A DNA stretch of 64,000 bases, from contig OX638155.1 in NCBI GenBank assembly GCA_951804945.1, positions 70,246,001-70,310,000 of the forward strand, read 5' to 3'. Positions 13,401 through 60,407 of this stretch are shown here, piece by piece. This stretch comes from Podarcis cretensis (taxonomy: Eukaryota). The notes beneath the pieces are model-generated. The model did no database searches. It saw nothing but the letters and a program-made list of their open reading frames with translations, and was not told where the DNA came from. How positions within the stretch are numbered: position 1 is the stretch's first letter; each line of letters starts with the position of its first letter. The translations under genes were made by a program, and so were the position numbers.

Positions 13401-13661
13401 GTAAAGGTAAAGGGACCCCTGACCGTTAGGTCCAGTCGTGGACAACTCTGGGGTTGCGGCGCTCATCTTGCTTTACTGGCCGAGGAAGCCGGCGTACAGC
13501 TTCCGGGTCATGTGGCCAGCATGAATAAGCCACTTCTGGCAAACCAGAGCAGCGCACGGAAATGCTGTTTACCTTCCCGCCGGAGCAGTACCTATTTACC
13601 TACTTGCACTACGTGCTTTCAAACTGCTAGGTTGGAAGGAGCTAGGACCGAGCAACAGGAG
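13401..13661 (-). mobile_element. Sauria SINE, 5'-truncated
   Basis: (CTTTAC)n tail and characteristic core; 12-bp TSD CTTTCCCTATAG. Confidence 0.92.
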
Positions 13662-15077
13662 CTTTCCCTATAGCCCAGGATTATTGATGGACAATACCTT
13701 TGGAAGTACCACAAATTATCCAGGAGCATGTGGACTTCACTGCTTAGTGTAGTGGTTATGAAAGGGAAAAAGAAACCACACACACATTTTATCCTGTTTG
13801 ATGGTCATTTATTACATTGGCCAACAAATCAGGTTCACAAAACAACTTGTCACCAGCATCATCACAAATTTGGATGTCATTATATTTCTGCTCTGAAATT
13901 TATCCTTGGATATCTCAATCTCTTCTGGCTGAAGGAAATGGTGACATTATCTTGGCAATATACTCTGTAAGAACAACACAGGCAACAGTGACTATGTATA
14001 AGAATGAATGTGATTACTTACCTGGATTCTGCCACGGAGGGGGAGTTGTTTTTTTATTTCTTGTTATACTCAATTTCAATTTTGTGACTTTGTACAATAT
14101 GTATATCATTGAAAAACCAATTAAAATAGTTAAAAGTTCATTTAAGGTCGAATATGATTGTAGCATCTAAGTCAAACAGGTGACTAAATCTAGTTGATAG
14201 AATCTCTTATGTCTGAGGGGATGGAAAGAAACATGGGGTGATGATAGTGGGTTCAGAACCAGGTTAGTGTAATGGTTAAAAGAATCAGACCTTGATCATG
14301 GAGATCAAGGTTCAAATGCTTGCTTGGAATTGAGGGCATCAGATCTATTTTTCCTTAGTTTTGTGTATTTTGCAGATACCTAATAACTTGTCCTAAATGC
14401 CCTGCCATCTGATGGTGCAGAAATAATACAAATTGCCAGCAGCTGAGTGAAGAACCAAGTATTGTCTCCATTTACTGTTCCTATGCCATCAATTTCCAGC
14501 AAGCAGATGGAGGAAAGCTGGATCTCTTTTTTTCTATATTGTGTTAAATTGCAGCGCAACCCTGACATCTACTCAGAAATAAATCCTGTTGAACTTGAGG
14601 GTTAGGCTAAGGCTGCAACTCTAACTCCACCTAGTAGTGTGAGGCCCCATTGATTTAAATAGGATTTGCATCTCTGTGTACAGGGTTAGAATTGTGCTAC
14701 TACTTGTGTATTTATTCCATTGTGCAGGTATCTTGTTTGCCTCCTTGAGCCTACTAATGAAAAGCCACCTTTAAGGCGGCATTTCGGTTGTACTGTTCTT
14801 ATAGCAGAAGTTTGGTCCTGGGTGTTTGTTTTTTTTATTAATTATGATGATGCTTTTTAGTTGCTGAACTTCCTTGTTTTTATTGCCCGCTGATTTTGTT
14901 CGGCGAGTGTAAAACACGGTGGAATTGGGATATATTTAGAACAAATTCAATAGACAAGAAGACGAAACATTAAGCCGTTTTTAGATGTACGCTTTAATGA
15001 AGTGCGGGAGGAGGGGAACGAGAGCCTGCCTTCACAACGTTGGCAATCCGCCCTTTCCAGAGCGGCGGCGAAGCAGC

Positions 15078-36500: not shown

Positions 36501-39500
36501 TCTCCCTACTCAAGTTTGCTGATGACTGACAATCTCTTTATCTGTTTGGAGAAATAGATGAAAAACCAGAAGAAATGTTCAAGTCACTTAAGAATAAAGG
36601 AAATGAATTTGTGAAAAAGGGTAACTATGAAGAAGCATTGATAAAGTACAATGAATGCATCAAAATAAATTCCCAGGAACAGACTATCTACACTAACAGG
36701 TAAGGAGAATTTTAAAACACTATCAGATGCAACCCAGCTTATTCAAATCAGCAGGCATTTGTCATTCATTTTAGTGGGAAATTGATTTTGTCCAACTTTA
36801 ATTTTGTAATTGAAAGCTAGTTTCATTGCAGTTCTGTTATATGAAAGTCTATGCCTTTATATTAAGACGTTTATACTCTGCTATGCAGAGAGGACCATAA
36901 ACATCTGGGCACACAATTCTCATATTGCCTTTCCAAATAGTACAGTCATACCTCAGTTTTTGAACAGCTTAGTTCACGAACAACTTGGAACTCAAATGCT
37001 GCCAACCCGGAAGTAGATGTTCCGGTTTGCGAACTTTGCCTTGGAAGCCGAACGTCTGGCGCGGCTTCCGATTGGCTGCAGAACACTCCTACAGCCAACC
37101 GGAAGCTGCACCTTGGTTTTCGAATGTTTTGGAAGTTGGACAGACTTCTGGAATGTATTCTGTTTGAAAACCAAGGTATGACTGTATATCAGAATCAAAC
37201 TTAGGTTGGCCATTTAGCCAGTCTTATAACTACAACCATACATATTTCTTAATATACAAATAATGGGACTTTGAGAATTGGCCTCAGGGTTCTATGGGTG
37301 CTACCCTATGTTCTTACAGTGCTTTTTCTTTTTTCTCTATAGGGCCCTTTGTTACTTGAAACTGTCTCAATATGAAGAAGCCAAAAAGGATTGTGATCAT
37401 GTTCTTCAGATTGATGACTCTAACATAAAAGCTTTATACAGAAGAGCTCTAGCATACAAAGGATTACAGGTAAGAAAAGAGTTTTAATATAATATAATAA
37501 TAATTTATTATTTATACCCCGCCCATCTGGCTGAGTTTCCCCATCCACTCTGTGCGGCTTCCAATCAAGTGTTAAAAACAATACAGCATTAAATATTAAA
37601 AACTTCCCTAAACAGGGCTACCATCAGATGTCTTTTAAAGAGAAGATAGCAGCTTATTTCCTTCACATCTGAAGGGAGGGCATTCCACAGGGCTGGAGCC
37701 ACTACCGAGAAGGCCCTCTGTCTGGTTCCCTCTAACCTCACTTCTCGCAATAAGGGAACCGCCAGAAGGCCCTCAGTGCTGGATCTCAGTGTCTGGGCTG
37801 AACAATGGGGGTGGAGACGCTCCTTCAGGTATACAGGACTGAGGCCGTTTAGGGCTTTAAAGGTCAGCACCAGCACTTTGAATTGTGCTCGGAAACGTAC
37901 TGGGAGCCAATGCAGATCTCTCAGGACCGGTGTTATGTGGTCCCGGGAGCCACTCCCAGTCACCAGTCTAGCTGCCGCATTCTGAATTAATTGCAGTTTC
38001 CGGGACACCTTCAAAGGTAGCTCTTAACTTGCTCAGTGTTAGCTATAGCATAAATGATAACATTTAAATTATCAAAAGTTTGAAGGAGGGAGAATTCCTG
38101 TTGTTTGAAGAAACAGAAATGGAAAAATGCTGACTGCTGATTTAGAGGAACACTTTGTGGTAGTCACAGCATCACTTGACCTAGTCTTAATGCCAGTTCT
38201 TACTATGTTTTGCTATGTTTCATATTTATGAGTATTTGTAAATTTTGTGATATTTCCAGCTATTCAGTTTATAAGGCCCATAATTGACTTTTTAAACATT
38301 TCAGAACTACAAAGCCAGTATTGATGATTTGAAGAAAGTTCTTCTAATAGATTCAAATATTGATGAAGCAAAGAAGGAGCTGCAGGAAACAACACAGTTG
38401 CTAAAACTGAAAAATGAGCATACAGTCAACGGGCAACAAAAGCAAAGGAAAAAAATTGAAATCCAAGAGGTATTCAGTTAAAAAAAAATCATGTACTGGG
38501 CATATAAGTGTGTAAGATTCAGACCTCCTTATGAAATGTCTGGATTGAACTGCTGAGTTCTCAAGCACTTTGTGGTAACTGGCAAGCTAAGTAAGTTGTG
38601 CAAGTCAGTTTTAGACCTGCTGGTTGTGGGGACTCTTTTCTGAGAAAATAGTGGAAGGCTAGAACCAGCTAGTCAGTATCTTTGCAAATCATGCTTAGGG
38701 TCTTCTGGGCTTGTGTTTTATTAACAGGATCCTGTTTTGTTTGATGTTATAAACAAATGTGACTAGCCACCAGCTGATTATCACATAGTAAACACCATAT
38801 TAAATAGTTTTGGCTTACTTATTGCTTATTATACAGCAGTCATAAAGAGAATCCCATTACAGTACTAAAGGAAGGTAATTTAGAATGTTACTTATTACAT
38901 CCAAAATATTTGTAATGCTTAAAATCTTGATGCTATATTTGAATTTAAGATGCCCTTAGTCCCATTGCTTCCTTTTCTATATTACAGGTAACTCACAACT
39001 TGGTTTGCATTCAATTTTATGTGCTTGGCAAATTTTCTTTAAAAAAAACTAATTGTGAAAATTGAACCACCCTGAGATGTTATGATCAAGAGTGGTATAT
39101 TAACTATGTGTTCATTTTCCTTTTCACTCAAAAAGGGGTTCCCAATTAATGATAAATGCCAAAAATGTTTCCCCCCCCTCTAATTAAATGTTTAAATTTT
39201 GCCTCCAATTTCCTCCTTTGTGCATATAAGAATCTATCTGCTGTGATCGTATATTGAGATAATATTCCAAAATCCTTTTATTATGTATCCATTGGCCCAC
39301 ACCCAGTTCTGTATCTTCAATTTCCACTTCCTGTTGTATTTGCCATGTTTTTTCAGCCTTATCTAGTACTGACTCTTCCTTTTGTGTTTCTCTTTCCAAA
39401 AAGAATGCCAGAGATTTAATTGCTTTATCCCTAGGATCACTCCAAGTCATAGGTCAAATTCTTTCTCTCTCAATTCCATCGATGTCAGATTATCCAGATC

Positions 39501-39730
39501 TTTCTTCATTTATGTCATTTTTGTTTTCCAAAATCTTACCTTCATTTCTCCAAACACTTGTATAGTGGGTACTTCCATTTCATCAGTTGTTCCTTCTAGT
39601 TTTGCCATAGTTTCATCTCTCAGTCCTGCCAGTTCTTTGTCATCTTTGCCTCTATATAATTTCTGATCTTAATTTCCATTTCATTAATCTCTGGTATAAT
39701 TTCATTCCCCATTTTCATTTTCTGTGAAGC

Positions 39731-39779
<49 letters not shown>

Positions 39780-41748
39780 TTTATAATGTATCTAAAACAG
39801 AGAATCCTAACAGATTAAAAGATGAAAAACATAACTATAAAATAGGAATGAGTAGCACGTTAGTGTTTACTTGCACTTTATTTTAACTATCAACATTGTT
39901 ATGCAGTTGCCGTTGAGTCAAGATTATTGTCGAGTGATTGAGGGACAGCAAAAGCCCAAATCAGCAAGTGGACAGGGTGGAAGCTAGAGGGAAATGCCCT
40001 GGATCAAGGGCCACCAACATTGCTTTGCAGGTGCACACGTGATCACCAAGGGCTTCCCTGGCATCTGCAGGGTCGCCTCTCCTCCACTGAAATTACTGTA
40101 TTGGCCCAAATATAAGCTGCACCTTTAAAATTGGAGGGAGTGGAGACAAAAAGAACCAAAATATAAGGTGTTCCTGACTGCATACTGGACGGCGGCGGCG
40201 GAGCCGTGCTGCTTTGCCAGCGACCTTTCCCCTTTCTCGCTCTCTCCCTTCCCATCCTTGGGGGAGAGGATGGGGGACTGCACACAGGACAGGCACTGCT
40301 TTGCCGCTCTCTGGATGCATACCATAAGGTCGCAAATATAAGCCACACTTTTTTCATGGTCGGAATTTGGGAAAAAAGTGAGGCTTATATCCAGGCCAAT
40401 ATGGTAGGTCTGAAAGTAGCTTTCTGTTGTAGCTAGTAGAATGTGTTACAGTGTGGGTGTGATGCCCATGGCAGTTTCCCTGGTTTGCAGATGTGCCCAC
40501 AGGCCTCCAAAGGTTGGTAACTCTTATCCTAGACTCAGCGCAGTCTCTCAGTTCTGAACAAAAGTTTTTTGATGCTGGAGTTAACATTGAAACTGTTAAT
40601 AGTCCCTCCCTCACCCAACCTCTCTGATTTTCTAAGTGCACCAGTTTGTTTACTGCTTTTAGTATACGCTGCTCTGATTGCAGACACCCCATCATATGTG
40701 CAGCCAGCTATGTGGAAGTCAGTTAAACATATAAGACACCTGCACGGCATGGGCATGCAGAGGATGAACATGAGCAAATAGGTGAAGCCAGGCATAATTT
40801 TTTTACATCCTTTTTTACCATGCAGTCAGCACCCCACTGAGAGGGATGGAGCCACCACAATCAAGCTCACCTATGTTATAATCTGGCAGCTGCACATGTG
40901 AACAGGGTCAGACATTGAATATATCATTTTGATGGTGTCTAGGACAGAATTAAAATGTCTCTTGGGAGAAAGATTTTACTAAGTTTTACTCAGGCGGCAA
41001 TAATAATTTCTCTGACTGTGCTCCTGCTTATCACAATTATGAAATGTTACATGTTGCATACATATATCAAAACCGACTGGGCATGTGGTTATTTCTTTGT
41101 GAAGGTGAATGAGGAAGAGGAAGCTAGAGAGACCTGGACTTCAGAGAAGGCTACATCAAATCATGACAGCGCTAAAGGAGAGACTGACGCAGTGCCAATG
41201 AATAGTTCAGAAAAACTCATTATTTCAAAGCCATCTAATGCCTATGAATTTGGTCAGATTATAAATGTTGTGAATGTCAATAAGGACATCGCTGCTTGTG
41301 CAGAGCTCTTGACAGCGATTGAGCCAAAAGATTTACCAGCCCTTTTAAGCAACAAACTAGAAGGAGACATTTTTCTGCTCTTTATCCAAGCCCTGCAGTC
41401 GGATGTATTTTGTCAAGACCCTGGACTGGTGTACCAGCATCTTGTCCACCTGAGTAGAGCAGAAAGGTTTAAGGTAAGGAATTATGGCATTTGCTGTCAA
41501 TTATTTCTGAAAATGTGCATGTTTATGAAATGCTAGCTTTTACTAGACATTTAGACAAATACCATTTGCAGATAGTATTTATAAATGCTAACCACACATT
41601 TTTTTTCCCTTTTCAGATGGTGCTAACGCTACTTAGTAAGAACGAAGTAGAACAGATTCAACAACTGTTTGATTCTCTTTCCAAAGAGGAAAACCAACAA
41701 TTTTCTTTAGATGATCTGAAGAGCCTTAAGAGAGACTTTGAACTTTAA
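17690..41748 (+). CDS. SPAG1: Sperm-associated antigen 1 (TPR co-chaperone for axonemal dynein assembly, RPAP3-C-like C-terminus), complete, 965 aa
   Basis: 18 GT-AG coding exons in consistent phase, 2898 nt in total; N-terminus [15 protein letters not shown], three TPR clusters ([32 protein letters not shown]) and C-terminal PSNAYEFGQ...SNKLEGD. Confidence 0.95.
18503..18662 (+). CDS. SPAG1: SPAG1 coding exon 2
   Basis: tttag|A TCT GGT GAA ... ATG AAG|gtattc. Confidence 0.92.
18790..18915 (+). CDS. SPAG1: SPAG1 coding exon 3
   Basis: ttcag|AGC TGG ... AGA CAG|gtggga. Confidence 0.88.
19665..19732 (+). CDS. SPAG1: SPAG1 coding exon 4
   Basis: ctag|AGC AAA ... [10 protein letters not shown]|gtatgt. 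Confidence 0.88.
20030..20285 (-). mobile_element. CR1 LINE ORF2 fragment
   Basis: Translation ANAILGCI...[23 protein letters not shown] is typical of the CR1 ORF2 C-terminal region. Confidence 0.8.
20292..20400 (+). mobile_element. tRNA-derived SINE fragment
   Basis: Degenerate A/B boxes (TCAGTTGGTTAGAG; GGTTTGATCCC). Confidence 0.6.
20515..20627 (+). CDS. SPAG1: SPAG1 coding exon 5
   Basis: taag|G TTT GAT GTG GAA ... ACA G|gtaggt. Confidence 0.9.
21409..21514 (+). CDS. SPAG1: SPAG1 coding exon 6 (start of TPR cluster 1)
   Basis: ctag|GT TTG ... [25 protein letters not shown]|gtgagt. Confidence 0.93.
21554..21662 (-). mobile_element. L2-clade LINE 3' end with (AAT)n microsatellite tail
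   Basis: Same terminus as the 37.5-kb copy. Confidence 0.7.
22907..23037 (+). CDS. SPAG1: SPAG1 coding exon 7
   Basis: gcag|G AGC ATA ... [12 protein letters not shown] ... AAA G|gtaaaa. Confidence 0.93.
24716..24822 (+). CDS. SPAG1: SPAG1 coding exon 8
   Basis: gcag|CT TTT ATG CGC CGT ... GCT AAG|gtaagt. Confidence 0.93.
25090..25280 (+). mobile_element. Degraded L1/Tx1-like ORF1 fragment
   Basis: Translation [17 protein letters not shown] resembles the L1 ORF1 motif LE.RSRRNNLRI.G..E. Confidence 0.5.
26259..26421 (+). CDS. SPAG1: SPAG1 coding exon 9
   Basis: acag|AAA AAC ... [15 protein letters not shown] ... AAA A|gtaatt (weak donor; phase fits the next exon). Confidence 0.82.
27893..28312 (+). 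CDS. SPAG1: SPAG1 coding exon 10 (linker and start of TPR cluster 2)
   Basis: gtag|AA ACT GCT ... [17 protein letters not shown] ... TCT G|gtgagt. Confidence 0.9.
28674..28773 (+). CDS. SPAG1: SPAG1 coding exon 11
   Basis: taag|GA ATC ... [16 protein letters not shown] ... AAC AG|gtaaat. Confidence 0.93.
29264..29462 (+). mobile_element. tRNA-derived squamate SINE (Squam3-like)
   Basis: Head TAGCTCAGTGATAGAG...GTCCCAGGT; 3' end AAGGCAGCTTCATAT. Confidence 0.75.
30965..31178. mobile_element. Tc1/mariner-type MITE
   Basis: TIR CAGTGGTACCTCT; TA flanks. Confidence 0.88.
31329..31466. mobile_element. hAT-like MITE abutting an L2 3' fragment
   Basis: CAGGGATGGGGAAT...ATTCCCTACTCCTG with a palindromic interior; degraded relative near 29610-29740. 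Confidence 0.7.
31778..31930 (+). CDS. SPAG1: SPAG1 coding exon 12
   Basis: ttag|T GCA CTA GAA ... [11 protein letters not shown] ... AAC AG|gtaaaa. Confidence 0.94.
33013..33170 (-). mobile_element. SINE with tRNA(Lys)-like head and CR1-like tail
   Basis: Minus-strand GACTCTTAATCTCAGGGTTGTGGGTT head and CR1-type GGTCCCTTC...TTCTATG tail. Confidence 0.75.
36049..36224 (+). CDS. SPAG1: SPAG1 coding exon 13
   Basis: ctag|G ATA ACA ... [13 protein letters not shown] ... CCT A|gtatgt. Confidence 0.86.
36558..36699 (+). CDS. SPAG1: SPAG1 coding exon 14 (start of TPR cluster 3)
   Basis: atag|AT GAA ... [18 protein letters not shown] ... AAC AG|gtaagg; an alternative in-frame AG lies 6 nt upstream. 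Confidence 0.85.
36943..37184. mobile_element. Tc1/mariner-type MITE
   Basis: TIR CAGTCATACCT; TA flanks. Confidence 0.85.
37343..37469 (+). CDS. SPAG1: SPAG1 coding exon 15
   Basis: atag|G GCC CTT TGT ... TTA CAG|gtaaga. Confidence 0.94.
37490..38020 (-). mobile_element. 5'-truncated L2-clade LINE (ORF2 C-terminus plus 3' end)
   Basis: Open frame [14 protein letters not shown]...[21 protein letters not shown]; AAT-rich tail. Confidence 0.88.
38305..38469 (+). CDS. SPAG1: SPAG1 coding exon 16
   Basis: tcag|AAC TAC ... RKKIEIQE|gtattc. Confidence 0.92.
39150..39725 (-). mobile_element. Degraded L1-like fragment
   Basis: Strongly A-rich minus strand with broken K/E-rich coding character. 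Confidence 0.4.
39733..39776. repeat. (TTA)n microsatellite
   Basis: Seen directly. Confidence 0.95.
40096..40404. mobile_element. Tc1/mariner-type MITE
   Basis: TIR CTGTATTGGCCCAAATATAAGC / GCTTATATCCAGGCCAATATGG; TA flanks. Confidence 0.8.
41105..41473 (+). CDS. SPAG1: SPAG1 coding exon 17 (RPAP3-C-like domain)
   Basis: gaag|GTG AAT ... TTT AAG|gtaagg. Confidence 0.9.
41617..41748 (+). CDS. SPAG1: SPAG1 last coding exon
   Basis: tttcag|ATG GTG CTA ... GAA CTT TAA. Confidence 0.92.
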   Translation: MVLTLLSKNEVEQIQQLFDSLSKEENQQFSLDDLKSLKRDFEL

Positions 41749-43060
41749 ACAACTTCATTTTGGAACTGCCTCTAGCATGCATTCCCTTAATGCTTGTAGG
41801 ACGGGCATATAAACTATGCAGGCTTGCATGAGGTAAAGTCAGTCTTTTACCTGGACTGTTCAATATGCTGTACATTTTTTTTTACAGTACTTGCACACTG
41901 AAAAATCTGCTCTTCCGTCTTGTATATATTTTATCCTACAGAGTACACACGCATGGCTTTATAAGTAATGGGCCTATTCACTTACCATTTTGTTCCTGCA
42001 ATTATACAATGAGATCGGGAGCACAGGACTCAGGCTTGCACATTCCCTTCAGAGGGGAGAGAACACATGAGCCAGTGAGGACATGGTTCTCTGGGACAAA
42101 TCAACAGTTTCTAAAATGTGGGTCCCATATATAACAGTATATCTAATAATCAGAATGTATTCAGTGACATCAAGCTGTATTAATGGGGCTGAATATAGCC
42201 ACCTATGTTGTATTCCCTTTCTTGTAATACAGGAGTGTCTTCTAAAGATGCTACTATTTCAGAAATGTCTTTGGACATGTAGCATTGATGGAGAACATCT
42301 TGTACAAAAGTTCCATTGACAGAATGGAAATTGTGCATCATTATCTTTCAGTGGGGCTTATGCCGAAAAACAATCCTAGTGCATTTGTGCCTACAGCCGC
42401 TCTGAGCCTGGCCTTGGCCGGGGAGGGCAGGGTATAAATAAAAATTATTATTCTTATTATTACAGCCTTCATTTTTTTCCTGCTAGTCACATCTAACTGC
42501 AGTGCAGCTGAAACCTACCTTTCTTTCCATCAGTCGCCGATGCACTTGGACAAACACTTGCATCTAGCTCCAATTCTGTGTGGCTTCAAAGGAAAACACT
42601 GGCACACTTAAAATTCAATGCTAACTTAAATATATGCAGTAAAATGCTTTATGGCACTGAATGTGTAAAGTTACATCCGCACTTTGGTAAGCAGGTTCCA
42701 AGAAGGGACAGTTTGGTCATCTTCTACTTTGTGTCTTCTAGGTATACAAAAATCATTTTATATGGCTTGTGGACTACTGGTGAACAGCAAAACGGGAGCA
42801 GGATAGACTATGTTGTTAAATGTTTTAAAGCAATAGAACTGTTATATTTTTAAACCAGAGACTCGTAATTTATTGTTAGTGTGCATATCAAATTTTATTA
42901 TGGGAGGGACTGCTCAGGTAATTGCACTATTTTGAAGGTGAAATTAGTCAGTGACTTTCCCCATTATTAAATAACCTATGTATGACATTTCTGTTACCTT
43001 AAGACTTTAACCCGGTTGAAAGTTGTTTCCTTGAAGAACCCTTACAGGAAAATATTTAAA

Positions 43061-49944: not shown

Positions 49945-52900
49945 CTAGAAGGGGGAGAAGAGAGAAGTATTCATTAAAAAAATGTTTCAATTTGTGAAAT
50001 TAAAAATGGAAAAATGCAATTTAAAAGCATTTTAACACAATGCAGTATAGCTTTAGGAAAAAATGGCACTAAAAGCCTGGTGACTCATTCTGCTAATATT
50101 GCCCTTAATAAAATGATGTAATACAATATAAACACAACTATTTCAGGTGCTGAAACATTGCCTCTATTTATCTCTAACCATCCCTTTAAGGAAAAATGAG
50201 CCACTATTATTCAAATATAAGTTTAGTTTCTTTTTTTAAAAAAACTGCAGATATAAAGCCTTATGAACTGCAACTGATTTATGTGTTGAAACTCTGTTTT
50301 AAGAAAATAATTAACATATCAGATTTCTCACTGGACCTATGCACATAATCCATTATCTTCACTGTTCACTTCATGGATCAGTTGCAGTAGGGTTTTGCCT
50401 TGGAAGTTCTTGTCACAATCCATTTTAGTCCTTGAAGTGTCATAGGACTTTCCACTGTTTTTAGTACACATATCTAAAAGCACATTATGAGAACTTCTTC
50501 CTAACTTTAATGTGCCATGGATCCACAAGCATACATTCCAGAAGCCCATCAACCATTTGTAAAAGATATCCAGAAAGAAAACCATACAGGGTTGGATCCA
50601 GACATGCCAAATGGAAAAGGAGAGGCAATTTTCAGCAATTCTCCTTCCTCCTGCAGCCTGCCAAAAGCAGTTTAAGAGTCAGAGGACTATCTGGAGGCAT
50701 TGGGGGGGGGGGCTGCAGGAAGAATTGGTGGAAATCACTGCTCCTGTCCAGCAGGAAGTCTCTACAAGACCTCAGTCCTTTCTGTGAATGGAATGTCTGA
50801 AATTCACAGGATAGCCAAGCTGGATCTACCTTTACCAAGCTTTGCAAACTGTGGGAGGTGGGGAGATATAAAGACATCTTACACCAGTTTCTCAATAAAA
50901 AAGAAATGTGCAAATATAATTTTTAAAACCAAGCCAGGAAAAAAATTCTGCCAAGAGCTTTTATTTCAAGGCAAAACAGATGCACTAAGTGGACAGTGAG
51001 GATTTTGGATAGTTCTAGCAAGAAATCTGATTGACAAAGTTACTTCATAAAAGCAGAGATCCAAAGCTTTTTTAAAAAATGAATTTAACAAGGTTTTGTA
51101 TCTGCAGGTCAAGAAAATTATATTTGAGTAATAGCAGCTCAAACCAAGAAGAAACTAAAAATCCCACCACCTCCCTGGCTCTGAAGGACTGAACTTCAGA
51201 AGGGTGGGGCAGAAATTTGATAATAGATAAAAAAATATTGTTACATCCAACAACAATCATACCAGAAATTTCAAAGAAGGGGAATTCATTAATGCTGCTT
51301 TTGAAGACTACTACAAGGTATGCATATTGAATACGACATCGTTCAATTAACAGAATTGAATAAGCTGCATTTCTATTCACATTTCCACTACTTAATTCTT
51401 ACCTGTCCAATGGGATATATGAATTTAAAATGGATCCAGCCATCGCTTTGGTGCTGGCATTGTCACTAACTGTTCCTAAACTAACGGTGCCCGACTCTCC
51501 ACTCAAACTGCACCTTTCCTTCTGCACGTCTGCTTGAACTTCCAACCTTGGGGAGAAATTCAATTTTAGTTCTGTTATTATCTTTCAGCTTTCATATCAC
51601 TTGGGAGTCTTTTAGAAGCTTCTGCTTGCAAGCTACTCACAGGCATGTGGCTAGAGAATGAGACTCTTAATCTCAGGGTCGTGGGTTTGAGCCCCACCAA
51701 TGGGTTGGACGATATGAACCTCATGGTCCTTTCCAACTCTACAATACTATGATTCTATTATCTAGTTGGCTACTGTCAGTACAAAAGCTTCCCAGACTAC
51801 AAAAGACCCATGTTTAGACAATATTTTCCTGTTGCCCCTGAAGCCATACACATGGTAGAAGGTAGAACTCCTTATGTTATTTTGGTACATTGCTCACTGT
51901 AGTTGAGACAGAAAACCAACTACAGAAGAATAGCACTATTTGGCCAAAAAAAGAGGGGCAGAAAATATCATTTATTATGAGCCCAACTCATTTCAGAAAA
52001 AAATCTTCTCTCAAAGCCCCCCCCCTTTTAGCAACAGTTTTGACACACCAAACACACTGCACTAAATTCTGTTGCCAGAAACTTTCGAAGTGGCCTATGT
52101 AATTTGTAGCACCTGAACTTCCTTCCCTTCCTTTAACTTCAATTGAGTAATCAGGGATCAGAAAGCTTCTTTAATCCATGTAAACAAAGTAACTGTTTTT
52201 AGACTACATGAGATAAAAAAAAAAAAGTATCACATCAGAACGTACAACACGAAAAAGTTCATCCTCTCAGAGCTAACTGTAGTTTGTTTACAAAAGCAGA
52301 CACAAAAACTGAACTTTGGACACAAATTATCTTACCTGTTAAAGCAGTTGACCATTGCACTTCCCGACAGACTCCCTGTTATACTGGCTCCAGCCAGGGC
52401 CATAGTGCTGGCAGTTTCGCTCAGATTGTCTCGAATTGCTCCCATTCTGTCCATATGGCTACCACTTGCACTCAGGCTTCCAGTCAATCCTCCAACACTT
52501 TCTTCCCCTATGCTGGGGTTATTACGTGCCTCTGCTACTGATGTGGTATCTAAATATGAAAGGTAAAGGTAAAGACACTTAAACTCGGGACGTAAGGGAG
52601 AAACGTGCTAAGAGGAAAGCACGGTTGGCAAATCCACACCGTGATCAACTCCCACCCAGAAACCAATGTCCCCACTGTGGAAGGATGTGTGGATCCAGAA
52701 TTGGCCTCCACAGTCTCTTACGGACTCATTGTTAAAACCGTGTTTATGGAAGACAATCTTACTCGACTACGAGTGACTGCCAAAGAAGAAAGATCTAAAT
52801 ATGAAAAGGGTGGTACTTAAAATTAATAGGAAAAGCATTTCACTGAAACTCCTTCAATGTAGAGAAAGACATTGCTCTTGGAAAAGCTGAAACAGTGACT

Positions 52901-53319
52901 ACTAGGGTTGCTGCTAAGCTTTTCCATGTGTCCCAAGAATCTGGGTTAGTGCTGGTCCTAGACTGATATAACTACAATGTCTGCAAGAAGAGAGCATGTA
53001 TATCATCTATCAACTCAAGCCATCAACTGAAGACATTGAGAAGAGACTGGAACAGACTTTCCTTACCTACTGCTGCATTTGTTCCACCAACAGTTATATC
53101 ATTTTCATCATCAAATTCTATTCTGACACCCTTTCCATTGCCAGCCGATACACCGCAACCTCCGCTTCGGCAGAGAGAGATAGGAACTACTCCATAGACA
53201 TAGGCCAACATAATCGGGACACCAATTCCTGCAATAAAAATGTAGAACACTATAATCAGTACAGAGTTGTCATGTTGTGTGATATCTCTGTCTGTTTGTT
53301 TGTTTGTCTGTCTGTCTCG

Positions 53320-53350
<31 letters not shown>

Positions 53351-56300
53351 GAGAGAGAGAGATCACTATATATCTCCTTATTATACAATTTAATAGGCTA
53401 TCACAAAAAGTGGCAAAGAAAGTAAAAGCTGAATTACTATTATAAATGAAAAAGACACTCCCCTTAATCCTATAAACACCTCCTGATGCCAGGAGTTTCT
53501 ATGTGACACTGAGATCCTCTGCTTCTAATGCCTCTTCCATTCATTTCAACTGATGAATCAGGTCTGTATGTACACTGTTTTGTACCACTGGGTGTGGTTC
53601 TTCCCTTGGAATTGATGGGGCTTGACCCAAGGGCTCACATACGTATCTGAACCCACACAGGTATCTTGTACTGAGGCCCTGGTTTTCAGAGAGAATCTTA
53701 CCAAACCTACAATAATTGGGATGAGTGCTTAGGCACAGGGATTGTTTCAGCTCCACATACTTTTATAAGCTAGTAATGCATTTTTTAAAAATAGGGTTCA
53801 GAGCTGTAAAATGAATGCCTAGCAGCATCGATAATATCAATTCTTTGTGCCCCACCTTTACAGCAATGTGTAAACAAAGCTTTTTATAAATCAGTATAAA
53901 TAACTAATTCTGAAAGGGTTTTCCTGATTTTTACCTGCACCTTTACTTACCAACAGTTACTGCAGCTACAACCGGTGAAACAATTACAGACAAGGTTACG
54001 CCACCTGCAATGGCCAAGTTCCTCTTGTGCTTTGAAATGTCTTTACCTTCATAGCGATTGTGAATCTTTAAGAAAAAGAGCATTTTAGAATGCATTGCAC
54101 ATCACAAAACTGAGAAGTATTTCCTGCAAGAATATATATATATTTTATTTTGAGCTGCCTTTTCTTAAATGAAGCGTCTTAATGCCACAGATTTATAGAC
54201 AGAAACTGTTTGCAAATATTACTAGCTTATTTAATTCTATGCTGCTGCATTATACTTTTTTTAAGTGTTTTTTTTAAAAAAAATTAAACTTTTTTTCCTG
54301 GTTCTAGGTACATTTATTTATGTAAGTTGACTAAAGGCAGTCTCTCTCTCTCTATATATATATATATTACTACAACATCTTGAAGTACAACATGTTGCTG
54401 TATGAACAAGCCTTAAACATGTATACAAAAGTATCCAAGTCCTATGTAACTGAAGACTCTAAACACACACGTCACCTTACCTTACGTCCCACATATACAG
54501 GTATTCCAATAATCATAGCTGGAATAGCAATGCCTGCTATTAAGGCGATTCCCACAGGTGCACCCACAAGCGTCCCTAGTTGCCACAGTATTTTCTTCTT
54601 CCGACTCCATGGTTTTTTCCCCCAGAATGTACAACCTGATGGACTATTTGAAGAAATTTTCCATAAGTAAGGCAAACTTATGACTCACAGTGAATAGTCT
54701 TAACTAACCATCAGTTTTATAATAACATTCTCTAACAGAGAGAGCAAGAATGCTTGAATCTGCAATCCTGCTAAAAGTGTTAAATGTTTCAGGTTGTGGA
54801 GAGAGTAATCTGAAACTAATATAGTACCAGACCAGCAGCACACCATTTATATCCAGTGCATTTTCTTTTTGGTTCCATCAGATCATGGCTCTTCCCAGGG
54901 CTGATGCTAAAATAGGCAACTCGGGATTTGGAACAAAGTTTCTCCACCTACGTTTTAAATGAACCTCTTTACTATGAATGGGGAAAATTTACCTTCCTCA
55001 AATTTAACTGAAACATCTGACAAGTTTTGTCTTTCTCTAGGAATTGTGTGTTTTACTTAGGCAAAACCTCTAAGGCCTGTTGATGAAGTTTTATGGCAGC
55101 AGCTGTCCCACTTGTTCTGAACACAGCTAGACACAATAACAAACAGAATGTTCTCTTTGCAAAAGGCTTCTCCAAGCATGTAGGACATATGATGGGAGGC
55201 GGGGGTTGTGGTGATAGATTTGATTCCATTGCTATCTTTCCTAGTGAAATTTACTGCAGGAAGTCCATTTTCTAATCTACCACAGTAAGTCCTGGGGTTT
55301 CCCCGTCACTTTATCATATTCTGAAGAGAGCTTCCGTGTGCACCAGGCTATAGAAAGCAAGGCACTTCCTGTAGTTGACACCCATGCAATGGAAAGTCCT
55401 GCCTTATCTAATATCAGTAAACTCCCTCTCAAACCAGTTTTATATATATTAAAAATCTAACCAGGTATGAAAATAGAATTCCACCTCAAACTAAGGTAAA
55501 GGTAAAGGTACCCCTGCCCGTACGGGCCAGTCATGTCCGACTCTAGGGTTGTGTGCTCATCTCACTTAAGAGGCCGGGAGCCAGCGCTGTCCAAAGACAC
55601 TTCCGGGTCACGTAGCCAGCGTGACGAAGCTGCTCTGGCGAGCCAGCACCAGCGCAGCACACGGAAACGCCGTTTACCTTCCCGCTATAAAGCGGTACCT
55701 ATTTATCTACTTGCACTTAGGGGTGCTTTCAAACTGCTAGGTGGGCAGGAGCTGGGACCGAAAGACGGGAGCTCACCCCGCCGTGGGGATTCGAACTGCT
55801 GACCATACGATCGGCAAGTCCTAGGCACTGAGGTTTTACCCACAGCGCCACCCGCGTCCCTACCTCAAACTAAAGACTACATCAAATGTGCATGATCAAA
55901 ACAAATGTCACTTGTTTCTTCATTCATTCATTCATTCATTCATTCCTTTTAAAGGATTTATAGCCTAGGCTGCTGTTAATTAGTGGGGTACAACATGAAG
56001 TGAGGTATATGAAATCTTTCAATACTTACCTTAAATAATGCAAGTCTGAAATCTCCTTCATGCATAGCCAACAGAATTCACATCCACAGACCGCACATGT
56101 CATATGATTGCAGCTTCCATCATTCATCTTTATTATATAAGCAGCACAGCGTGGGCATGGCTTTATGTCATCAGCTGTTTAAAAAGAAACCCAATGAACC
56201 CATGCTGCTTATGAGAACAAACAACACTGAAAATCATGTCTGGAAATGTTTGTAAATTTTAACTGGTTGCGACCAATTCCAAGTTCAGCCTAACTTAATA

Positions 56301-58300
56301 AAGAATTAACCTAAAGGGAGAAAAATTTAACTGGAGAACCGGGAGATCTGTGGGTGTATACAAAATTAATAAATAATAACAGGTACATGCAGGTACCTTT
56401 TACACAATTTTGGTGCAATGAGCTAGCTTGGTTGCTTCAGCCTGTCATTTGCAGTCAGCAAGGAAAGTCAGCGCTGTTTGGACACCTGGGATCCTAAAGA
56501 ACTTCTGTTTTCTTCTTCCTTTTAGTGAATTATTCCTGCATCTGTCTTATTTAGAGTAGTCCTTGGAATCTCCATAGTTTCCCCCCTTTTCCCATGGCAA
56601 CCAGGATACATATATCCTATGGATAGTTCATTTCCGATCAGGTACTGTCTAGAGGTTATTTTCTGCAACTACTACTACACAGTAAGAGTGGGTGGAAGCT
56701 AAATAATCCCTTTTCCATATGGCAAATGCAAAACATGAACACTTTGGAAAGTGGCTTAGGTGTGTCTCTTGCAGTGTAGGAGCACTCCAGGCACTCATTA
56801 AGAATTCAATGTATACTTAACTTACAGTCCAACAATACCCATACCTCCTTCAGAAGTAGTCTCTGTGCTTAATGGGACTTACTCCCAGGTAAGTGGGTAC
56901 AAAATAACAGCCTTGGCTTTGGTTTAGAATTGACACTGGGGGAAATGGGGTTTTTGTGTCTTTACCAGTTGCATCTCCACAATCAAGACCAGCAGGACAC
57001 AGATCTTCCCATGATAAACATGAGGTTGAGGAGGTTGACCATGTTCTCTTATTTTGTGTTACACCATGCTCCTATGGCAGCCATTTTGTGGCAAAACATA
57101 TCCACTGGCATGGGTGTAGCCAGGATTTTTCTTAGGAGGGGCAGGCCTTTTGTTAGGGAGGCAGAACCTCAGTTAGCTATGTATTTTTATTTAATGGGGG
57201 GGGCAGCTGTCCCTCCCTGTTCCTGCCCCCAGCAATGCCCATGTCTACTGGTCCCAAAAGGTTAGCAACCCCTGCTCTAAGTCAACATCTGTGACTCAGT
57301 ATAACAAAGAAGCACCTGGATCAGATGTTCTGACTATCCATATCCAAATAAAAATCCAACAGAGTGTACAGTGAAATTTTTCGCTCTACATTAAGTCAGT
57401 AATTATGCTCTAAAGCGATGCCAACTCCTCCCCCTTGCCCAAGATTCTGATGAGGTTTCTGGCTGTCCAGTGTGAAATAAGTTCACTGACAAAGCAAGGC
57501 ATTATATGCAGTCAGTCCTCTTGCACAGGTTACCAAGGAGCATATCATAGGTGAGTCAACAGATAGCCTGTTTTCTCTTCATATTGTGTAAATCTTTTGC
57601 CTTTAAAACAGGTGGATAGGCATGGTTATCAGCTGCAGAAGTATAAGCACAAGGGCAGTTTTTAAAAATAAAATAAATCTAGTATAGTAAGCTCTGTCCT
57701 TCACTTTCTACTTAAGTCATTGCTTATATTTTGAAGGCCTTCCCAAAAGTAATCATAAAAACAAAATAATTCATGAGTGAAATCTCAAAGCAAGACAATC
57801 ATGAAAATGTCTAGTTTCACTGCACTGTGATCCTTGGAAGAAGTACAGTAAAGAAATTTAATAAATAATAATAACAACAACAATGATATTGGTTAACTTC
57901 TATTAAGTCAACCATTATCAGTCGACTTCTGGATCATCTGATTATGAAAGTTTGCACCATTTGCATAATGCTGAAATAAGGGCTACTGGACTCAGCGCTC
58001 CTTTCTTAATAAACATCAATAATCAGTGAACAAAAGTTATCTGATAGTTTAAAATGTTTTAAAGACACCTAGTATTTCAGGTAATAAATACCTGCTGCTC
58101 CAGACTCCTGGCTGTAGCTAATGGACGAAGAACGAATTGTTCGCAAGCGTAGACTCTGGGCTCTCTCCTGGCGAGCAGCATCACAAGTCTGGTTGGGATG
58201 CCAAATTTGTTTACAATGATAGCAAAATTCAGTTCCACAGCCTTCACGTCCACATGTAAGTTTAGGACAGCTTGCACAGCCAAAAGCGATTACAGCATAC
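49254..58300 (-). CDS. RNF19A: E3 ubiquitin-protein ligase RNF19A (Dorfin, RBR family); partial, the ATG/RING1 exon lies right of the window
   Basis: 8 exons in phase: IBR ([19 protein letters not shown]), RING2 ([32 protein letters not shown]), two hydrophobic transmembrane regions and a Ser-rich C-terminus ending AIQTEI*. Confidence 0.96.
51403..51546 (-). CDS. RNF19A: RNF19A exon ([20 protein letters not shown]...)
   Basis: ccaag|G TTG GAA ... GAC AG|gtaaga. Confidence 0.94.
51620..51757 (+). mobile_element. SINE with tRNA(Lys)-like head and CR1-like tail
   Basis: GACTCTTAATCTCAGGGTCGTGGGTTTGAGCCCCAC followed by GGTCCTTTCCAACTCTACAATACTATGATTCTAT. Confidence 0.75.
52336..52549 (-). CDS. 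RNF19A: RNF19A exon ([18 protein letters not shown]...)
   Basis: tttag|AT ACC ACA ... AAC AG|gtaaga; the acceptor lies within a TSD copy. Confidence 0.9.
52562..52792 (+). mobile_element. 5'-truncated RTE-clade LINE 3' end with an inverted Sauria-SINE-type tail stub at its left end
   Basis: [22 protein letters not shown] (52667-52735) and GAA-rich tail; 14-bp TSD ATCTAAATATGAAA (52548-52561 and 52793-52806). Confidence 0.85.
53067..53228 (-). CDS. RNF19A: RNF19A exon ([26 protein letters not shown]...)
   Basis: gcag|GA ATT GGT ... GTA G|gtaagg. Confidence 0.94.
53951..54065 (-). CDS. RNF19A: RNF19A exon ([38 protein letters not shown])
   Basis: aaag|ATT CAC ... GTT G|gtaagt. Confidence 0.94.
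54481..54643 (-). CDS. RNF19A: RNF19A exon (first transmembrane region)
   Basis: atag|T CCA TCA GGT ... CGT AAG|gtaagg. Confidence 0.94.
55495..55861 (-). mobile_element. Sauria SINE, full length
   Basis: tRNA-like head GGGACGCGGGTGGCGCTGTGG; (CTTTAC)n tail; 12-bp TSD ACCTCAAACTAA. Confidence 0.93.
55920..55945. repeat. (CATT)n microsatellite
   Basis: Seen directly. Confidence 0.9.
56030..56174 (-). CDS. RNF19A: RNF19A RING2 exon
   Basis: acag|CT GAT GAC ATA AAG CCA TGC ... TTA AG|gtaagt. Confidence 0.95.
57109..57243. mobile_element. hAT-type MITE
   Basis: TIR CATGGG...CCCATG; TSD TC(C/T)ACTGG. Confidence 0.78.
58092..58300 (-). CDS. RNF19A: RNF19A IBR exon
   Basis: taag|G TAT GCT GTA ... 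GCA G|gtattt. Confidence 0.94.
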
Positions 58301-59396
58301 CTTAAAATGTTCAAGAATAAGTAGGAGGAAGATTGTTATTCTCAGTACTGCACAGTGGCAAGCAGTAAAACTGACTTTCGGGGATAAATTAAGAAATATC
58401 CCTTATTCTGAAAACAGAACTCCATTGTCATTGTGATCTAGCTAACAAAAGTTTGAAGATCTGAACCTAACAATCTAAGTCCTTGTATTTCACAGTCTGT
58501 GTAGCATGTACTCTTTGATCTAAGTCCCAAGTTTCAACAATGAGAATGGTACATTCCAGATTCCCACAATTCTAAATGCTTGGTGCTGACCTCAAGCCAT
58601 CTATAATAATTGTGTTATTTTTTAAGGTCTTTCAAAGTTGCACACATTTTAGTGGTTAAGAGTTAGCAAAAATAGACTATGTAATTGCAGTTGCTTGTAG
58701 TTGCTTGTGTTCAGTGAAGCCCACAGTAGACACTACAAATGACAAATAAGTAATCAATAGGTCTAATCTTAAATTCCCCAAACCACCTCATCAAACTAAG
58801 GCAAACAGGAGTACCCACCAGTTGCTTGCAGCCATTTTATATAGTAACTTGAGTTGTGAGAATAAAATTAGTTATTCTCAAAACCTCTTAAAGCCAAACT
58901 ATAGGGAACTACTATCCTCAAAAGCAACAAAAGGTCAATGTTGTATAGCATGAACTAATATAACTTTTAAAAAAAACTACTTCCAATCCTGTGACTTGTC
59001 TACTATATAAAATACGATTAATATAATAAGGACCATCTCAGGCTTCCTCATCATCACAGTGGCAGCCAATGACTGGAACAGAAGATCCCACTAAAATGCA
59101 GTCTCTGGTCCTGCATTCAAAATGTTATCTCCTGGTTCACCCTTTACGTTCCCTCCGTGGTGTGGAAGCATTGGGAGGAATGTGGAGGCCCAAGGTTTGC
59201 TCTGAATTCCACAATCTGTAAAACCCCAGGGGCCCAGGTCCAGCTGAAAACAAGCTTAGATTCAAATAATATTTCTGAGAACACAAAGTTGAAGGTAATC
59301 TTAATTTTCATATTCCAACCCAACAACTACCAGAGAGAAGTGGGGCACATTGTATCAAACAGACATAGTGCATATGTGACAGAAAATCAGTGAGCA

Positions 59397-59623
59397 CTGG
59401 AGAGTTAACAGTGTCTCTTATAATACACAAGAGGTTTGACTCTGAAATTAAGCTGTTAATCCCAGCTTTTCCCCATGAACATTCTCTAATCAATAATAGT
59501 AATGCAATAATGCCATTTGTAGAAGGGAAGGCAAGTTCAATAGACCAACAGGGATTCTGCCCTTTTGTGTAGAAATAAGGGCTTTGCTGGCAGAATCAGA
59601 GAACAGAGGTATAAAACATTAGG
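59397..59623 (+). repeat. 227-bp direct repeat, copy 1 (probable long TSD)
   Basis: Matches 60181-60407 with one mismatch seen (59534 A versus 60318 T). Confidence 0.93.
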
Positions 59624-59983
59624 TAAAGGTAAAGGTACCCCTGCCCGTACGGGCCAGTCTTGACAGACTCTGGGGTTGTGCGCCCATCTCACTCAAGAGG
59701 CCAGGGGCCAGCGCTGTCCGGAGACACTTCCGGGTCACGTGGCCAGCGTGACAAAGCTGCATCTGGCGAGCCAGAGCCGCACACGGAAACGCCGTTTACC
59801 TTCCCACTGGTAAGCGGTCCCTATTTATCTACTTGCACCCGGAGGTGCTTTCGAACTGCTAGGTTGGCAGGCGCTGGGACTGAGCAGCGGGAGCGCACCC
59901 CGCCCCAGGGATTCGAACCGCCGACCTTTCGATCGGCAAGTCCTAGGCGCTGAGGCTTTAACCCACAGCGCCACCTGCGTCCC
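59624..59983 (-). mobile_element. Sauria SINE, full length
   Basis: Same subfamily 3' end as the 55.5-kb copy. Confidence 0.92.
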
Positions 59984-60180
59984 AAAGGTAAAGGGACCCC
60001 TGACCATTAGGGTCCAGTCGCGGAGGACTCTTGCACTTCGACGTGCTTTCGAACTGCTAGATTGGCAGGAGCCGGGACCGAGCAACGGGAGCTCACCCCG
60101 TCGCGGGGATTCGAACCGCCAACTTTCTGATCGGCAGGCCCTAGGCTCTGTGGTTTAACCCACAGCGCCACCAGCGTCCC
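59984..60180 (-). mobile_element. Sauria SINE with internal deletion
   Basis: Head and tail present; central part missing at the GGACTCT/TGCACTT junction near 60030. Confidence 0.88.
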
Positions 60181-60407
60181 CTGGAGAGTTAACAGTGTCT
60201 CTTATAATACACAAGAGGTTTGACTCTGAAATTAAGCTGTTAATCCCAGCTTTTCCCCATGAACATTCTCTAATCAATAATAGTAATGCAATAATGCCAT
60301 TTGTAGAAGGGAAGGCATGTTCAATAGACCAACAGGGATTCTGCCCTTTTGTGTAGAAATAAGGGCTTTGCTGGCAGAATCAGAGAACAGAGGTATAAAA
60401 CATTAGG
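60181..60407 (+). repeat. 227-bp direct repeat, copy 2
   Basis: See copy 1. Confidence 0.93.

What the first reader, a model, noticed from the sequence alone, without database searches (positions are those of the whole stretch)
52548..52830. Retroelement insertion duplicates an RNF19A splice acceptor, leaving two identical 3' splice sites 245 nt apart
Seen in sequence: the 14-bp TSD ATCTAAATATGAAA reads TTTCATATTTAG|AT on the RNF19A strand, which is the acceptor itself. The distal copy (AG at 52796-52795) keeps the original upstream intron context. The proximal copy (AG at 52551-52550) abuts the real exon, and its polypyrimidine tract now comes from the insert (CTTTACCTTTACC-TTTCATATTTAG). 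Splicing to the distal copy would add antisense RTE sequence: [25 protein letters not shown] then TAA at 52720-52718, and 245 nt is not a multiple of 3. Inference: this is either a hypomorphic or NMD-regulated allele of a conserved E3 ligase, a route to a short RBR+TM isoform lacking the Ser-rich tail, or a case where inserted sequence rescues correct splicing.
Basis: partly seen in the sequence, partly recalled or inferred. Interest (0 to 1): 0.8.

Follow-up and report, generated by a model that had tools for sequence, protein, structure and literature searches.

The report
Retroelement insertion duplicating RNF19A splice acceptor
A 231-bp jumping-gene fragment landed exactly on a splice acceptor of the lizard RNF19A gene and duplicated it, the same layout as the dog Merle mutation, but the tools could not show which copy the cell uses.

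Summary
An exact 14-bp direct repeat (52548-52561 and 52793-52806) flanks a 231-bp insert. On the minus (gene) strand the repeat reads TTTCATATTTAG|AT, the 3' splice site of a conserved RNF19A exon (52549-52336). The intron therefore holds two identical acceptors 245 nt apart. A third, unnoticed acceptor-like CAG (52778-52777) follows a 12-nt pyrimidine run. Using either upstream site gives the same frame and a TAA at 52720-52718.

The "RTE" label does not hold. The body is the antisense 3' end of a LINE whose ORF2 ends in a C2H2 finger. The 13 nt next to the real exon are a sense-oriented Sauria-SINE tail, (ACCTTT)n, which supplies pyrimidines and TTTAC branch-point-like motifs.

A Logan-derived protein from another haplotype carries the same insert junction with a 13-nt deletion at the proximal acceptor. 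So the insertion is not an assembly artefact, and the site varies.

My best guess is that the real acceptor dominates, with minor transcripts carrying a premature stop. The architecture is that of canine Merle (PMEL), so this is a new member of a known kind. The scan also noted a similar DOCK2 case elsewhere in this genome.

The parts
53067..53228 (-). Upstream RNF19A coding exon; donor GT at 53066-53065 (TAG|GTAAGG).
   Evidence: Reading frame and splice signals read.
52807..53066 (-). Ancestral part of the intron. It holds the ancestral branch-point-like TTAAT, whose A lies 28 nt before the upstream AG.
52793..52806 (.).
52777..52792 (-). Cryptic acceptor made by the antisense LINE tail: a 12-nt pyrimidine run tctttcttcttt, then ggCAG (AG at 52778-52777). 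It is in the same frame as the upstream TSD copy.
   Evidence: direct reading.
52575..52792 (+). 5'-truncated 3' end of a LINE, antisense to RNF19A. It holds the last 50 codons of ORF2 (52583-52732, ending in a C2H2-type finger), a stop at 52733-52735, a short 3' UTR and an AAG-rich tail that ends at the TSD.
   Evidence: the match falls at the C-terminus (718-761) of the 761-aa P0057. P0057 carries RVT_1 at 251-520; other family copies share sequence up to ...AKEE and then diverge.
52562..52574 (-). 13-nt Sauria-SINE-type tail stub CTTTACCTTTACC, in sense orientation to RNF19A. With the TTT that opens the TSD it reads CTTT-ACCTTT-ACCTTT. It shares about 3 nt (AAG on +) with the LINE at the join. 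It supplies pyrimidines and TTTAC motifs 20 and 14 nt before the real AG.
   Evidence: three SINE copies in the window end ...ACCTTTACCTTTACC followed by T. PMC13295347 states that Sauria SINEs end in (ACCTTT)n. Metrics.
52548..52561 (.).
52336..52549 (-). Conserved RNF19A coding exon ([13 protein letters not shown]...NCFN-R), 214 nt, donor CAG|GTAAGA.
   Evidence: 96% identity to a protein that a source names E3 ubiquitin-protein ligase RNF19A.
52718..52720 (-). TAA reached if either upstream acceptor (52794 or 52776 exon start) is used.
52551..52567 (.). Span within which a 13-nt deletion (five equivalent placements) separates the window from a second haplotype, seen as protein P0058. In that haplotype the real acceptor reads ...tctttacctttag|AT.

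Best explanation
One retrotransposition event put a 231-bp composite into the 3' splice site of an RNF19A intron. The composite has two parts:
- On the plus strand, a 5'-truncated LINE 3' end of about 218 bp, so it is antisense to the gene.
- At its other end, a 13-nt Sauria-SINE tail stub in the sense of the gene.

The staggered nicks bracketed the last 12 nt of the intron plus the first 2 nt of the exon. The 14-bp TSD therefore copied the whole acceptor (shown).

Inferred mechanism:
- The ancestral branch point, pyrimidine tract and AG now sit 245 nt upstream of the exon and remain fully competent.
- The antisense LINE tail adds a strong pyrimidine run plus CAG just behind them.
- The real exon keeps an AG whose pyrimidine tract and a TTTAC branch-point-like motif at -20 come from the SINE-tail stub.

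I expect the real acceptor to stay the main site. It has an optimal 214-nt exon, a better local pyrimidine tract, and the gene is retained intact. A minority of transcripts would use the upstream TAG or CAG, hit the TAA at 52720-52718 and be removed by nonsense-mediated decay. This makes it a mild hypomorph rather than a knockout.

The splicing outcome is inference only. No read evidence could be obtained.
For: Structure:
- The exact 14-bp TSD occurs only twice in the window.
- The LINE identity of the body rests.
- The SINE-tail identity of the stub rests.
- On the gene strand the stub plus the first TTT of the TSD run in register as (ACCTTT) units. The TSD starts with T after a T, and a TTTT lies 13-16 nt upstream. 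This fits the Sauria-SINE insertion signature described in PMC13295347.

The insertion is real and not brand new:
- P0058, from one Logan contig, encodes the antisense-exon ORF running into the same LINE junction.
- P0058 differs from the window by a 13-nt deletion and two ACG>ATG changes.
- Four samples of organism A hold 0.91-0.96 of the sampled 31-mers of 52300-53260.

Splice-site metrics:
- Real acceptor: pyrimidine fraction 0.82 at -20..-4, with TTTAC at -20 and -14.
- Upstream copy: 0.76, with TTAAT at -28.
- Cryptic CAG: a 12-nt pyrimidine run.

Other points:
- The downstream exons are open and conserved.
- In dog Merle alleles with short oligo(dT), the original acceptor next to the exon is used normally despite the insert (PMC6091007).
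- Presumed RNA contig runs hold 0.43-0.54 of the words. My count of the 31-mers that lie wholly inside the two exons gives 0.34. So some intron or insert sequence is present in RNA contigs.
Against: - No junction read was seen for any acceptor.
- The upstream copy keeps everything that made the ancestral site work, and it is closer to the donor. Established work on duplicated 3' splice sites (from memory) says such a site competes well.
- The CAG behind a 12-nt pyrimidine run is a textbook exonization signal.
- The metrics used are simple counts, not a trained model. No MaxEnt or SpliceAI is installed.
- Two AGs (52585-84 and 52579-78) lie between the best branch-point-like motif of the insert (CTTAC, -43) and the real AG.
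- The excess of words in RNA runs could equally be pre-mRNA, exonization or transcripts of other LINE copies. Those runs are only guessed to be RNA and belong to a different species label (F) from the best DNA holders (A).
- Whether RNF19A's C-terminal tail is under strong constraint in this lineage is not known.
Confidence: 0.5

Rival explanations
1. Neutral intron expansion. The real acceptor, rebuilt by the SINE-tail stub, is used essentially always. The upstream copy and the CAG are silent because exon definition needs the 214-nt exon and its enhancers.
For: - The real acceptor has the highest local pyrimidine content and a TTTAC at -20.
- The gene is intact downstream.
- The insertion is shared by at least two haplotypes and probably by four samples.
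- Cryptic-merle dogs splice normally.
Against: The upstream copy is sequence-identical from -12 to +2 and keeps its ancestral branch point. Complete silence of a formerly constitutive acceptor that lies closer to the donor would be unusual. RNA-run word shares exceed the exon-only value.
Confidence: 0.25
2. Strong hypomorph or truncating allele. The ancestral branch point still commits the intron, the first AG downstream (52796-95) or the CAG is used in most transcripts, and RNF19A is largely lost to nonsense-mediated decay or made as an RBR+TM protein without the Ser-rich tail.
For: - The upstream context is intact and there is a 12-nt pyrimidine run plus CAG.
- Proximity to the donor favours this site.
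- Standard and harlequin Merle show such a switch.
- The 13-nt deletion at the real acceptor in a second haplotype could be read as relaxed constraint on that site.
Against: - The downstream coding exons show no decay.
- The insertion seems common in organism A.
- The pyrimidine run is far shorter than the >=66 T needed for cryptic-site use in Merle.
Confidence: 0.2
3. Assembly artefact or chance repeat. There is no real insertion at this acceptor.
For: the repeat finder did not list the pair. No read pile-up could be laid.
Against: - The 14/14 repeat sits exactly at the ends of a LINE 3' terminus and a SINE tail.
- An independent Logan contig product (P0058) reads from the exon into the same junction and has private differences.
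- Word shares of 0.91-0.96 in four samples exceed the roughly 0.72 expected without the insert, if its 31-mers occur nowhere else in the genome. The other LINE copies found are only 69-88% identical at the protein level.
Confidence: 0.03

Closest known systems
Canine Merle allele: SINEC_Cf insertion at the PMEL (SILV) intron 10 / exon 11 boundary
   Same: - A retroelement is inserted antisense exactly at a 3' splice site.
- It is flanked by a TSD (15 bp in Merle) that contains the original splice acceptor.
- The antisense tail creates a pyrimidine tract followed by a cryptic acceptor inside the element.
- The outcome is a competition between the original acceptor next to the exon and the upstream cryptic site.
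(PMC7349775; PMC6091007.)
   Different: - Here the element is a LINE 3' fragment with a short AAG-type tail (12-nt pyrimidine run), not a SINE with 25-105 T.
- Exonization here is out of frame and gives a premature stop, whereas Merle gives an in-frame 52-aa insertion.
- A sense-oriented SINE-tail stub sits directly in front of the real acceptor.
- No splicing or phenotype data exist.
Exonization of antisense retroelements (Alu-type: antisense tail as pyrimidine tract plus cryptic AG)
   Same: The antisense tail plus a nearby AG gives an acceptor-like signal (tctttcttctttggCAG). This is the general principle summarised in PMC7349775.
   Different: Typical Alu exonization makes a new internal cassette exon deep in an intron. 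Here no good donor exists inside the insert, so use of the site would extend an existing constitutive exon by 227 or 245 nt.
Sauria SINE / Bov-B (RTE-clade) target-primed insertion signature
   Same: - The stub is the (ACCTTT)n tail.
- On the element-sense strand the TSD begins with T after a T and continues the repeat register.
- A T stretch lies roughly a helical turn upstream.
(PMC13295347; PMC6007223 abstract.)
   Different: - Only 13 nt of tail are present, with no SINE body.
- The rest of the insert is a different LINE in the opposite orientation.
- The T stretch is 13-16 nt upstream rather than about 10.
L1 twin priming and two-ended composite insertions
   Same: Both ends of the insert look like primed 3' tails that point outward inside one TSD. 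The two parts are joined at a short microhomology.
   Different: Twin priming inverts part of the same element. Here the two ends come from two different elements. The mechanism is not tested here. It is recalled from memory and from an unchecked note of this scan (s1-839439).

Membership tests
Merle-type acceptor-duplicating retroelement insertion | Retroelement flanked by a target-site duplication | tested here: met
   Exact 14-bp repeat at both ends of the 231-bp insert.
Merle-type acceptor-duplicating retroelement insertion | The TSD contains the original splice acceptor of the downstream exon | tested here: met
   TTTCATATTTAG|AT on the gene strand. The exon boundary is fixed by frame and by conservation starting at DTTSV.
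Merle-type acceptor-duplicating retroelement insertion | The antisense element tail gives a pyrimidine tract plus a cryptic acceptor | tested here: met
   12-nt pyrimidine run, then CAG at 52778-77.
Merle-type acceptor-duplicating retroelement insertion | Demonstrated use of the alternative acceptor in RNA | not testable with these tools
   The body ends ...GCCAAAGAAGAAAG. It shows no similarity to the SINE 3' region beyond the separate 13-nt stub. The (CAA)n tail is from PMC13295347.
LINE (non-LTR retrotransposon) ORF2 3' end | Homology to the C-terminus of proteins that carry a reverse-transcriptase domain, with family copies that end at a common 3' terminus | tested here: met
   P0057 has RVT_1 at 251-520, and the match is at 718-761 of 761 aa. 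Nine other copies diverge after ...AKEE. The clade (L2/CR1-like from memory) was not determined.
Sauria SINE | (ACCTTT)n 3' tail | tested here: met
   The stub CTTTACCTTTACC is identical to the tails of three SINE copies in the window. The tail is described.
Sauria SINE | tRNA-related head and SINE body | tested here: not met
   No SINE body is present. The sequence next to the stub is LINE.
RNF19A (RBR E3 ligase) | IBR domains, and orthology of this exon to proteins named RNF19A | tested here: met
   IBR / IBR_1 hits in the exons at 58072-58335 and 56029-56178. The exon ORF is 96% identical to a protein named E3 ubiquitin-protein ligase RNF19A. The spliced full-length model was not joined or searched.

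The most novel reading that the evidence does not exclude
The insertion is a dual-primed chimera. A Bov-B-type nick primed on a Sauria-SINE tail on one strand, and a LINE 3' end was primed on the other. It hit the acceptor because the RTE-type target (a T stretch, then a T|T about a turn later) resembles a polypyrimidine tract. The sense-oriented (ACCTTT)n tail, rich in pyrimidines and carrying TTTAC, then rebuilds the branch point and tract for the real acceptor. In squamates such hits on 3' splice sites would therefore be recurrent and partly self-healing. Unchecked notes on DOCK2 and KIF21B in this genome point the same way.
Probability: 0.15. Interest if true: 0.6.

Novelty: new member of a known kind. 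Interest (0 to 1): 0.35.

Why it matters
If carriers splice partly to the upstream copy, this is a natural, apparently common allele that tunes a conserved RBR E3 ligase through nonsense-mediated decay. It would also be a clean in-vivo competition between two identical acceptors. The variables would be only the branch-point source, the distance to the donor and the exon context. A second natural allele, the 13-nt deletion, changes the real acceptor. If carriers splice normally, it shows that 13 nt of SINE tail can replace an ancestral branch point and pyrimidine tract. Either way it is a non-mammalian counterpart of the Merle architecture. By itself it does not add a new principle.

Tried and rejected
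I did not call it again.
3. A protein word search with the exon ORF, meant to reach lizard contigs, returned only other vertebrates' genomic ORFs. Some of these may be human-derived and were not pursued.
4. A word search with the ORF that spans the right junction gave only other LINE copies at 69-88% identity and no junction-specific product.
5. No further copies of the insert exist in the window by blastn or tblastn.
6. Pfam (no significant match) and the ESM Atlas (only generic C2H2 clusters) did not identify the 50-aa insert ORF as LINE-derived.
8. RNA folding of 52540-52835 showed nothing special (z -1.05). Sequestering of the upstream AG in a stable structure is therefore not supported.
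9. A cassette-exon scenario was rejected. No donor inside the insert matches more than 6 of the 9 consensus positions.
10. Trained splice-site scorers are not installed.

Full report
**What is there**

The minus strand of 49-58 kb carries an RBR E3 ligase gene. IBR and IBR_1 domains are found in the exons at 58072-58335 and 56029-56178.

The exon at 52549-52336 is 96% identical to a protein that one source names E3 ubiquitin-protein ligase RNF19A. In relatives the conserved block begins at DTTSVAEA, after unrelated residues. This places the exon boundary at the AG at 52551-52550.

The upstream exon is 53228-53067, with donor TAG|GTAAGG. The exons were searched one by one by reference. The joined spliced model was not built or searched.

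**The observation**

ATCTAAATATGAAA occurs exactly twice in the window, at 52548-52561 and 52793-52806. Chance expects 0.13 hits with up to 1 mismatch. The two copies flank a 231-bp insert, 52562-52792.

On the gene strand the repeat is TTTCATATTTAG|AT, that is, the last 12 nt of the intron and the first 2 nt of the exon. The intron (53066-52550, 518 nt) therefore holds two identical acceptors 245 nt apart. The upstream copy keeps the ancestral intron in front of it.

Reading on from the upstream copy gives [25 protein letters not shown] and a TAA at 52720-52718.

The antisense LINE tail reads tctttcttctttggCAG|T (AG at 52778-77), 18 nt downstream and in the same frame.

**What the insert is**

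On the plus strand, 52583-52732 is an open 50-codon stretch that ends ...[22 protein letters not shown] and then a stop.

- A full HMMER scan found 13 relatives. One is P0057 (761 aa), where the match is the very C-terminus (718-761). Another is P0045 at 73% identity.
- P0057 has a reverse-transcriptase domain at 251-520.
- Nine other copies of the family share the sequence up to ...AKEE(E) and then diverge into their own flanks.

So the right end of the insert is the true 3' terminus of this LINE, and it abuts the TSD. The body is thus a 5'-truncated LINE 3' end lying antisense to RNF19A.

It is not Bov-B. Reptilian Bov-B ends in (CAA)n and shares its 3' region with Sauria SINEs (PMC13295347), and neither holds here. 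I could not name the clade. From memory it looks like the L2/CR1 group, but I did not test this.

The left 13 nt, GGTAAAGGTAAAG, are not LINE. The other copies continue with LINE sequence upstream, and the homology starts at about AAGACACTT.

- On the gene strand these 13 nt read CTTTACCTTTACC. This is identical to the tail of three roughly 350-bp SINE copies in the window. Those copies have a tRNA-like head and end ...ACCTTTACCTTTACC followed by T.
- It is also the (ACCTTT)n tail that the literature gives for Sauria SINEs.
- The tail continues in register into the TTT that opens the TSD. On that strand the TSD starts with T after a T, and a TTTT lies 13-16 nt upstream. This fits the described Sauria-SINE insertion signature reasonably well.

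The insert is therefore a composite with two retroelement tails pointing outward inside one TSD, joined at about 3 nt of microhomology. This agrees with the sibling note s1-835250. How it arose is inference: either both nicked ends primed on different RNAs, or there was a template switch.

**Is it real, and how old?**

A word search with the plus-strand ORF that runs antisense through the exon into the insert returned P0058 (109 aa, one Logan contig of 1550 nt, 99% identity).

- Its C-terminus, ...DVVSKGKDT then a stop, is reproduced from the window by one 13-nt deletion only (equivalent placements within 52551-52567). No deletion of any other length from 1 to 39 nt does so.
- It also differs from the window by two ACG>ATG changes.
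- It therefore reads from the exon into the same stub-LINE junction in an independent data set and a different haplotype. There the real acceptor has become ...tctttacctttag|AT.

This rules out an assembly artefact and shows that the site has varied since the insertion.

In the k-mer index, four samples of organism A hold 0.91-0.96 of the sampled words of 52300-53260. Organisms B to E hold 0.69-0.87. Lacking the insert would cost up to about 0.28 of the words, so C, D and E may be empty sites. Divergence of about 1% would give the same numbers. This is open.

**Splicing**

Later work used the regions beside them.

What remains is sequence logic:

| Site | Pyrimidine fraction, -20..-4 | Branch-point-like motifs and context |
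|---|---|---|
| Upstream copy (AG 52796-95) | 0.76 | Ancestral TTAAT at -28 |
| Cryptic CAG (AG 52778-77) | 0.71 | 12-nt uninterrupted pyrimidine run; TTCAT at -25, TTAAT at -46 |
| Real acceptor (AG 52551-50) | 0.82 | TTTAC at -20 and -14, both from the stub; CTTAC at -43, but two AGs lie between it and the real AG |

- No special RNA structure hides either site (z -1.05).
- No usable donor lies in the insert. Use of an upstream site would therefore lengthen the exon from 214 to 441 or 459 nt and place a stop 382 nt before the next junction. That predicts nonsense-mediated decay (established 50-55 nt rule).
- Presumed RNA contig runs of organism F hold 0.43-0.54 of the words. My count of the 31-mers that lie wholly inside the two exons gives 0.34. 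Some intron or insert sequence is therefore present in RNA contigs, but this does not say which form.

**Comparison with what is known**

The architecture is that of the dog Merle allele. There, an antisense SINE sits at the PMEL intron 10 / exon 11 boundary, flanked by a 15-bp TSD that contains the original acceptor, with a poly(T) plus a cryptic acceptor inside the SINE. Short tails leave the original acceptor in use and long tails shift splicing upstream (PMC7349775; PMC6091007).

By that yardstick a 12-nt pyrimidine run argues for mostly normal splicing. The fully intact ancestral acceptor copy argues for some leakage.

**Verdict**

- The structural reading is right.
- The "RTE" label is wrong for the body and right only for the 13-nt stub.
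- The functional alternatives remain open.
- My committed reading is that the real acceptor is dominant with a minor premature-stop isoform (confidence about 0.5).

This is a new member of a known kind and of moderate interest.

The scan noted similar events on other DNA of this genome. These are a duplication of the DOCK2 exon 2 acceptor (s1-842455), a Sauria-SINE tail proposed as a branch point for a KIF21B exon (s1-838193), and a two-ended Bov-B composite insertion (s1-839439). They are unchecked leads for the idea that RTE-type insertions hit 3' splice sites recurrently.

Noticed in passing
window 52551-52567 (seen through protein P0058): A second haplotype in a Logan contig carries the same insert junction. 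It has a 13-nt deletion that removes one ACCTTT unit and most of the intronic part of the proximal TSD copy. It also has two ACG>ATG changes, at 52240-52242 and 52249-52251. This is a natural variant of the real acceptor.
   Followed up: partly
window 13400-13760, 55495-55860, 59622-59990 (minus strand): Three roughly 350-bp SINE copies have a tRNA-like head (ARAGORN calls no tRNA) and the tail ...ACCTTTACCTTTACC, each followed by T. They are about 81% alike and match the literature description of Sauria SINEs.
   Followed up: partly
window 52562-52792: The insert has two different retroelement tails pointing outward inside one TSD, joined at about 3 nt of microhomology (AAG). It is possibly a dual-primed or template-switch product. 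This is the same stretch as the scan's note s1-835250.
   Followed up: partly
window 53296-53362 (minus strand, intron upstream of the 53228 exon): A compound microsatellite, (TC)n(GT)n(GA)n, is followed by (ACAG/ACAA)n.
   Followed up: no
window 27800-42000 (plus strand) and 1546-3081 (minus strand): There are TPR-like coding exons on the plus strand, and a 512-aa open frame on the minus strand. From memory this resembles the SPAG1 / FBXO43 neighbourhood of RNF19A in mammals. I did not test it.
   Followed up: no
window 19945-20193 (minus strand): An 83-aa open stretch (...[24 protein letters not shown]...) looks from memory like the C-terminal part of a CR1-type reverse transcriptase, so a different LINE family from the one in the insert.
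   Followed up: no
window 59397-60407: Another note of the scan (s1-835192) reports a 227-bp near-perfect direct repeat flanking a Sauria SINE pair here. The duplicated ORFs at 59369-59569 and 60159-60353 are consistent with it.
   Followed up: no
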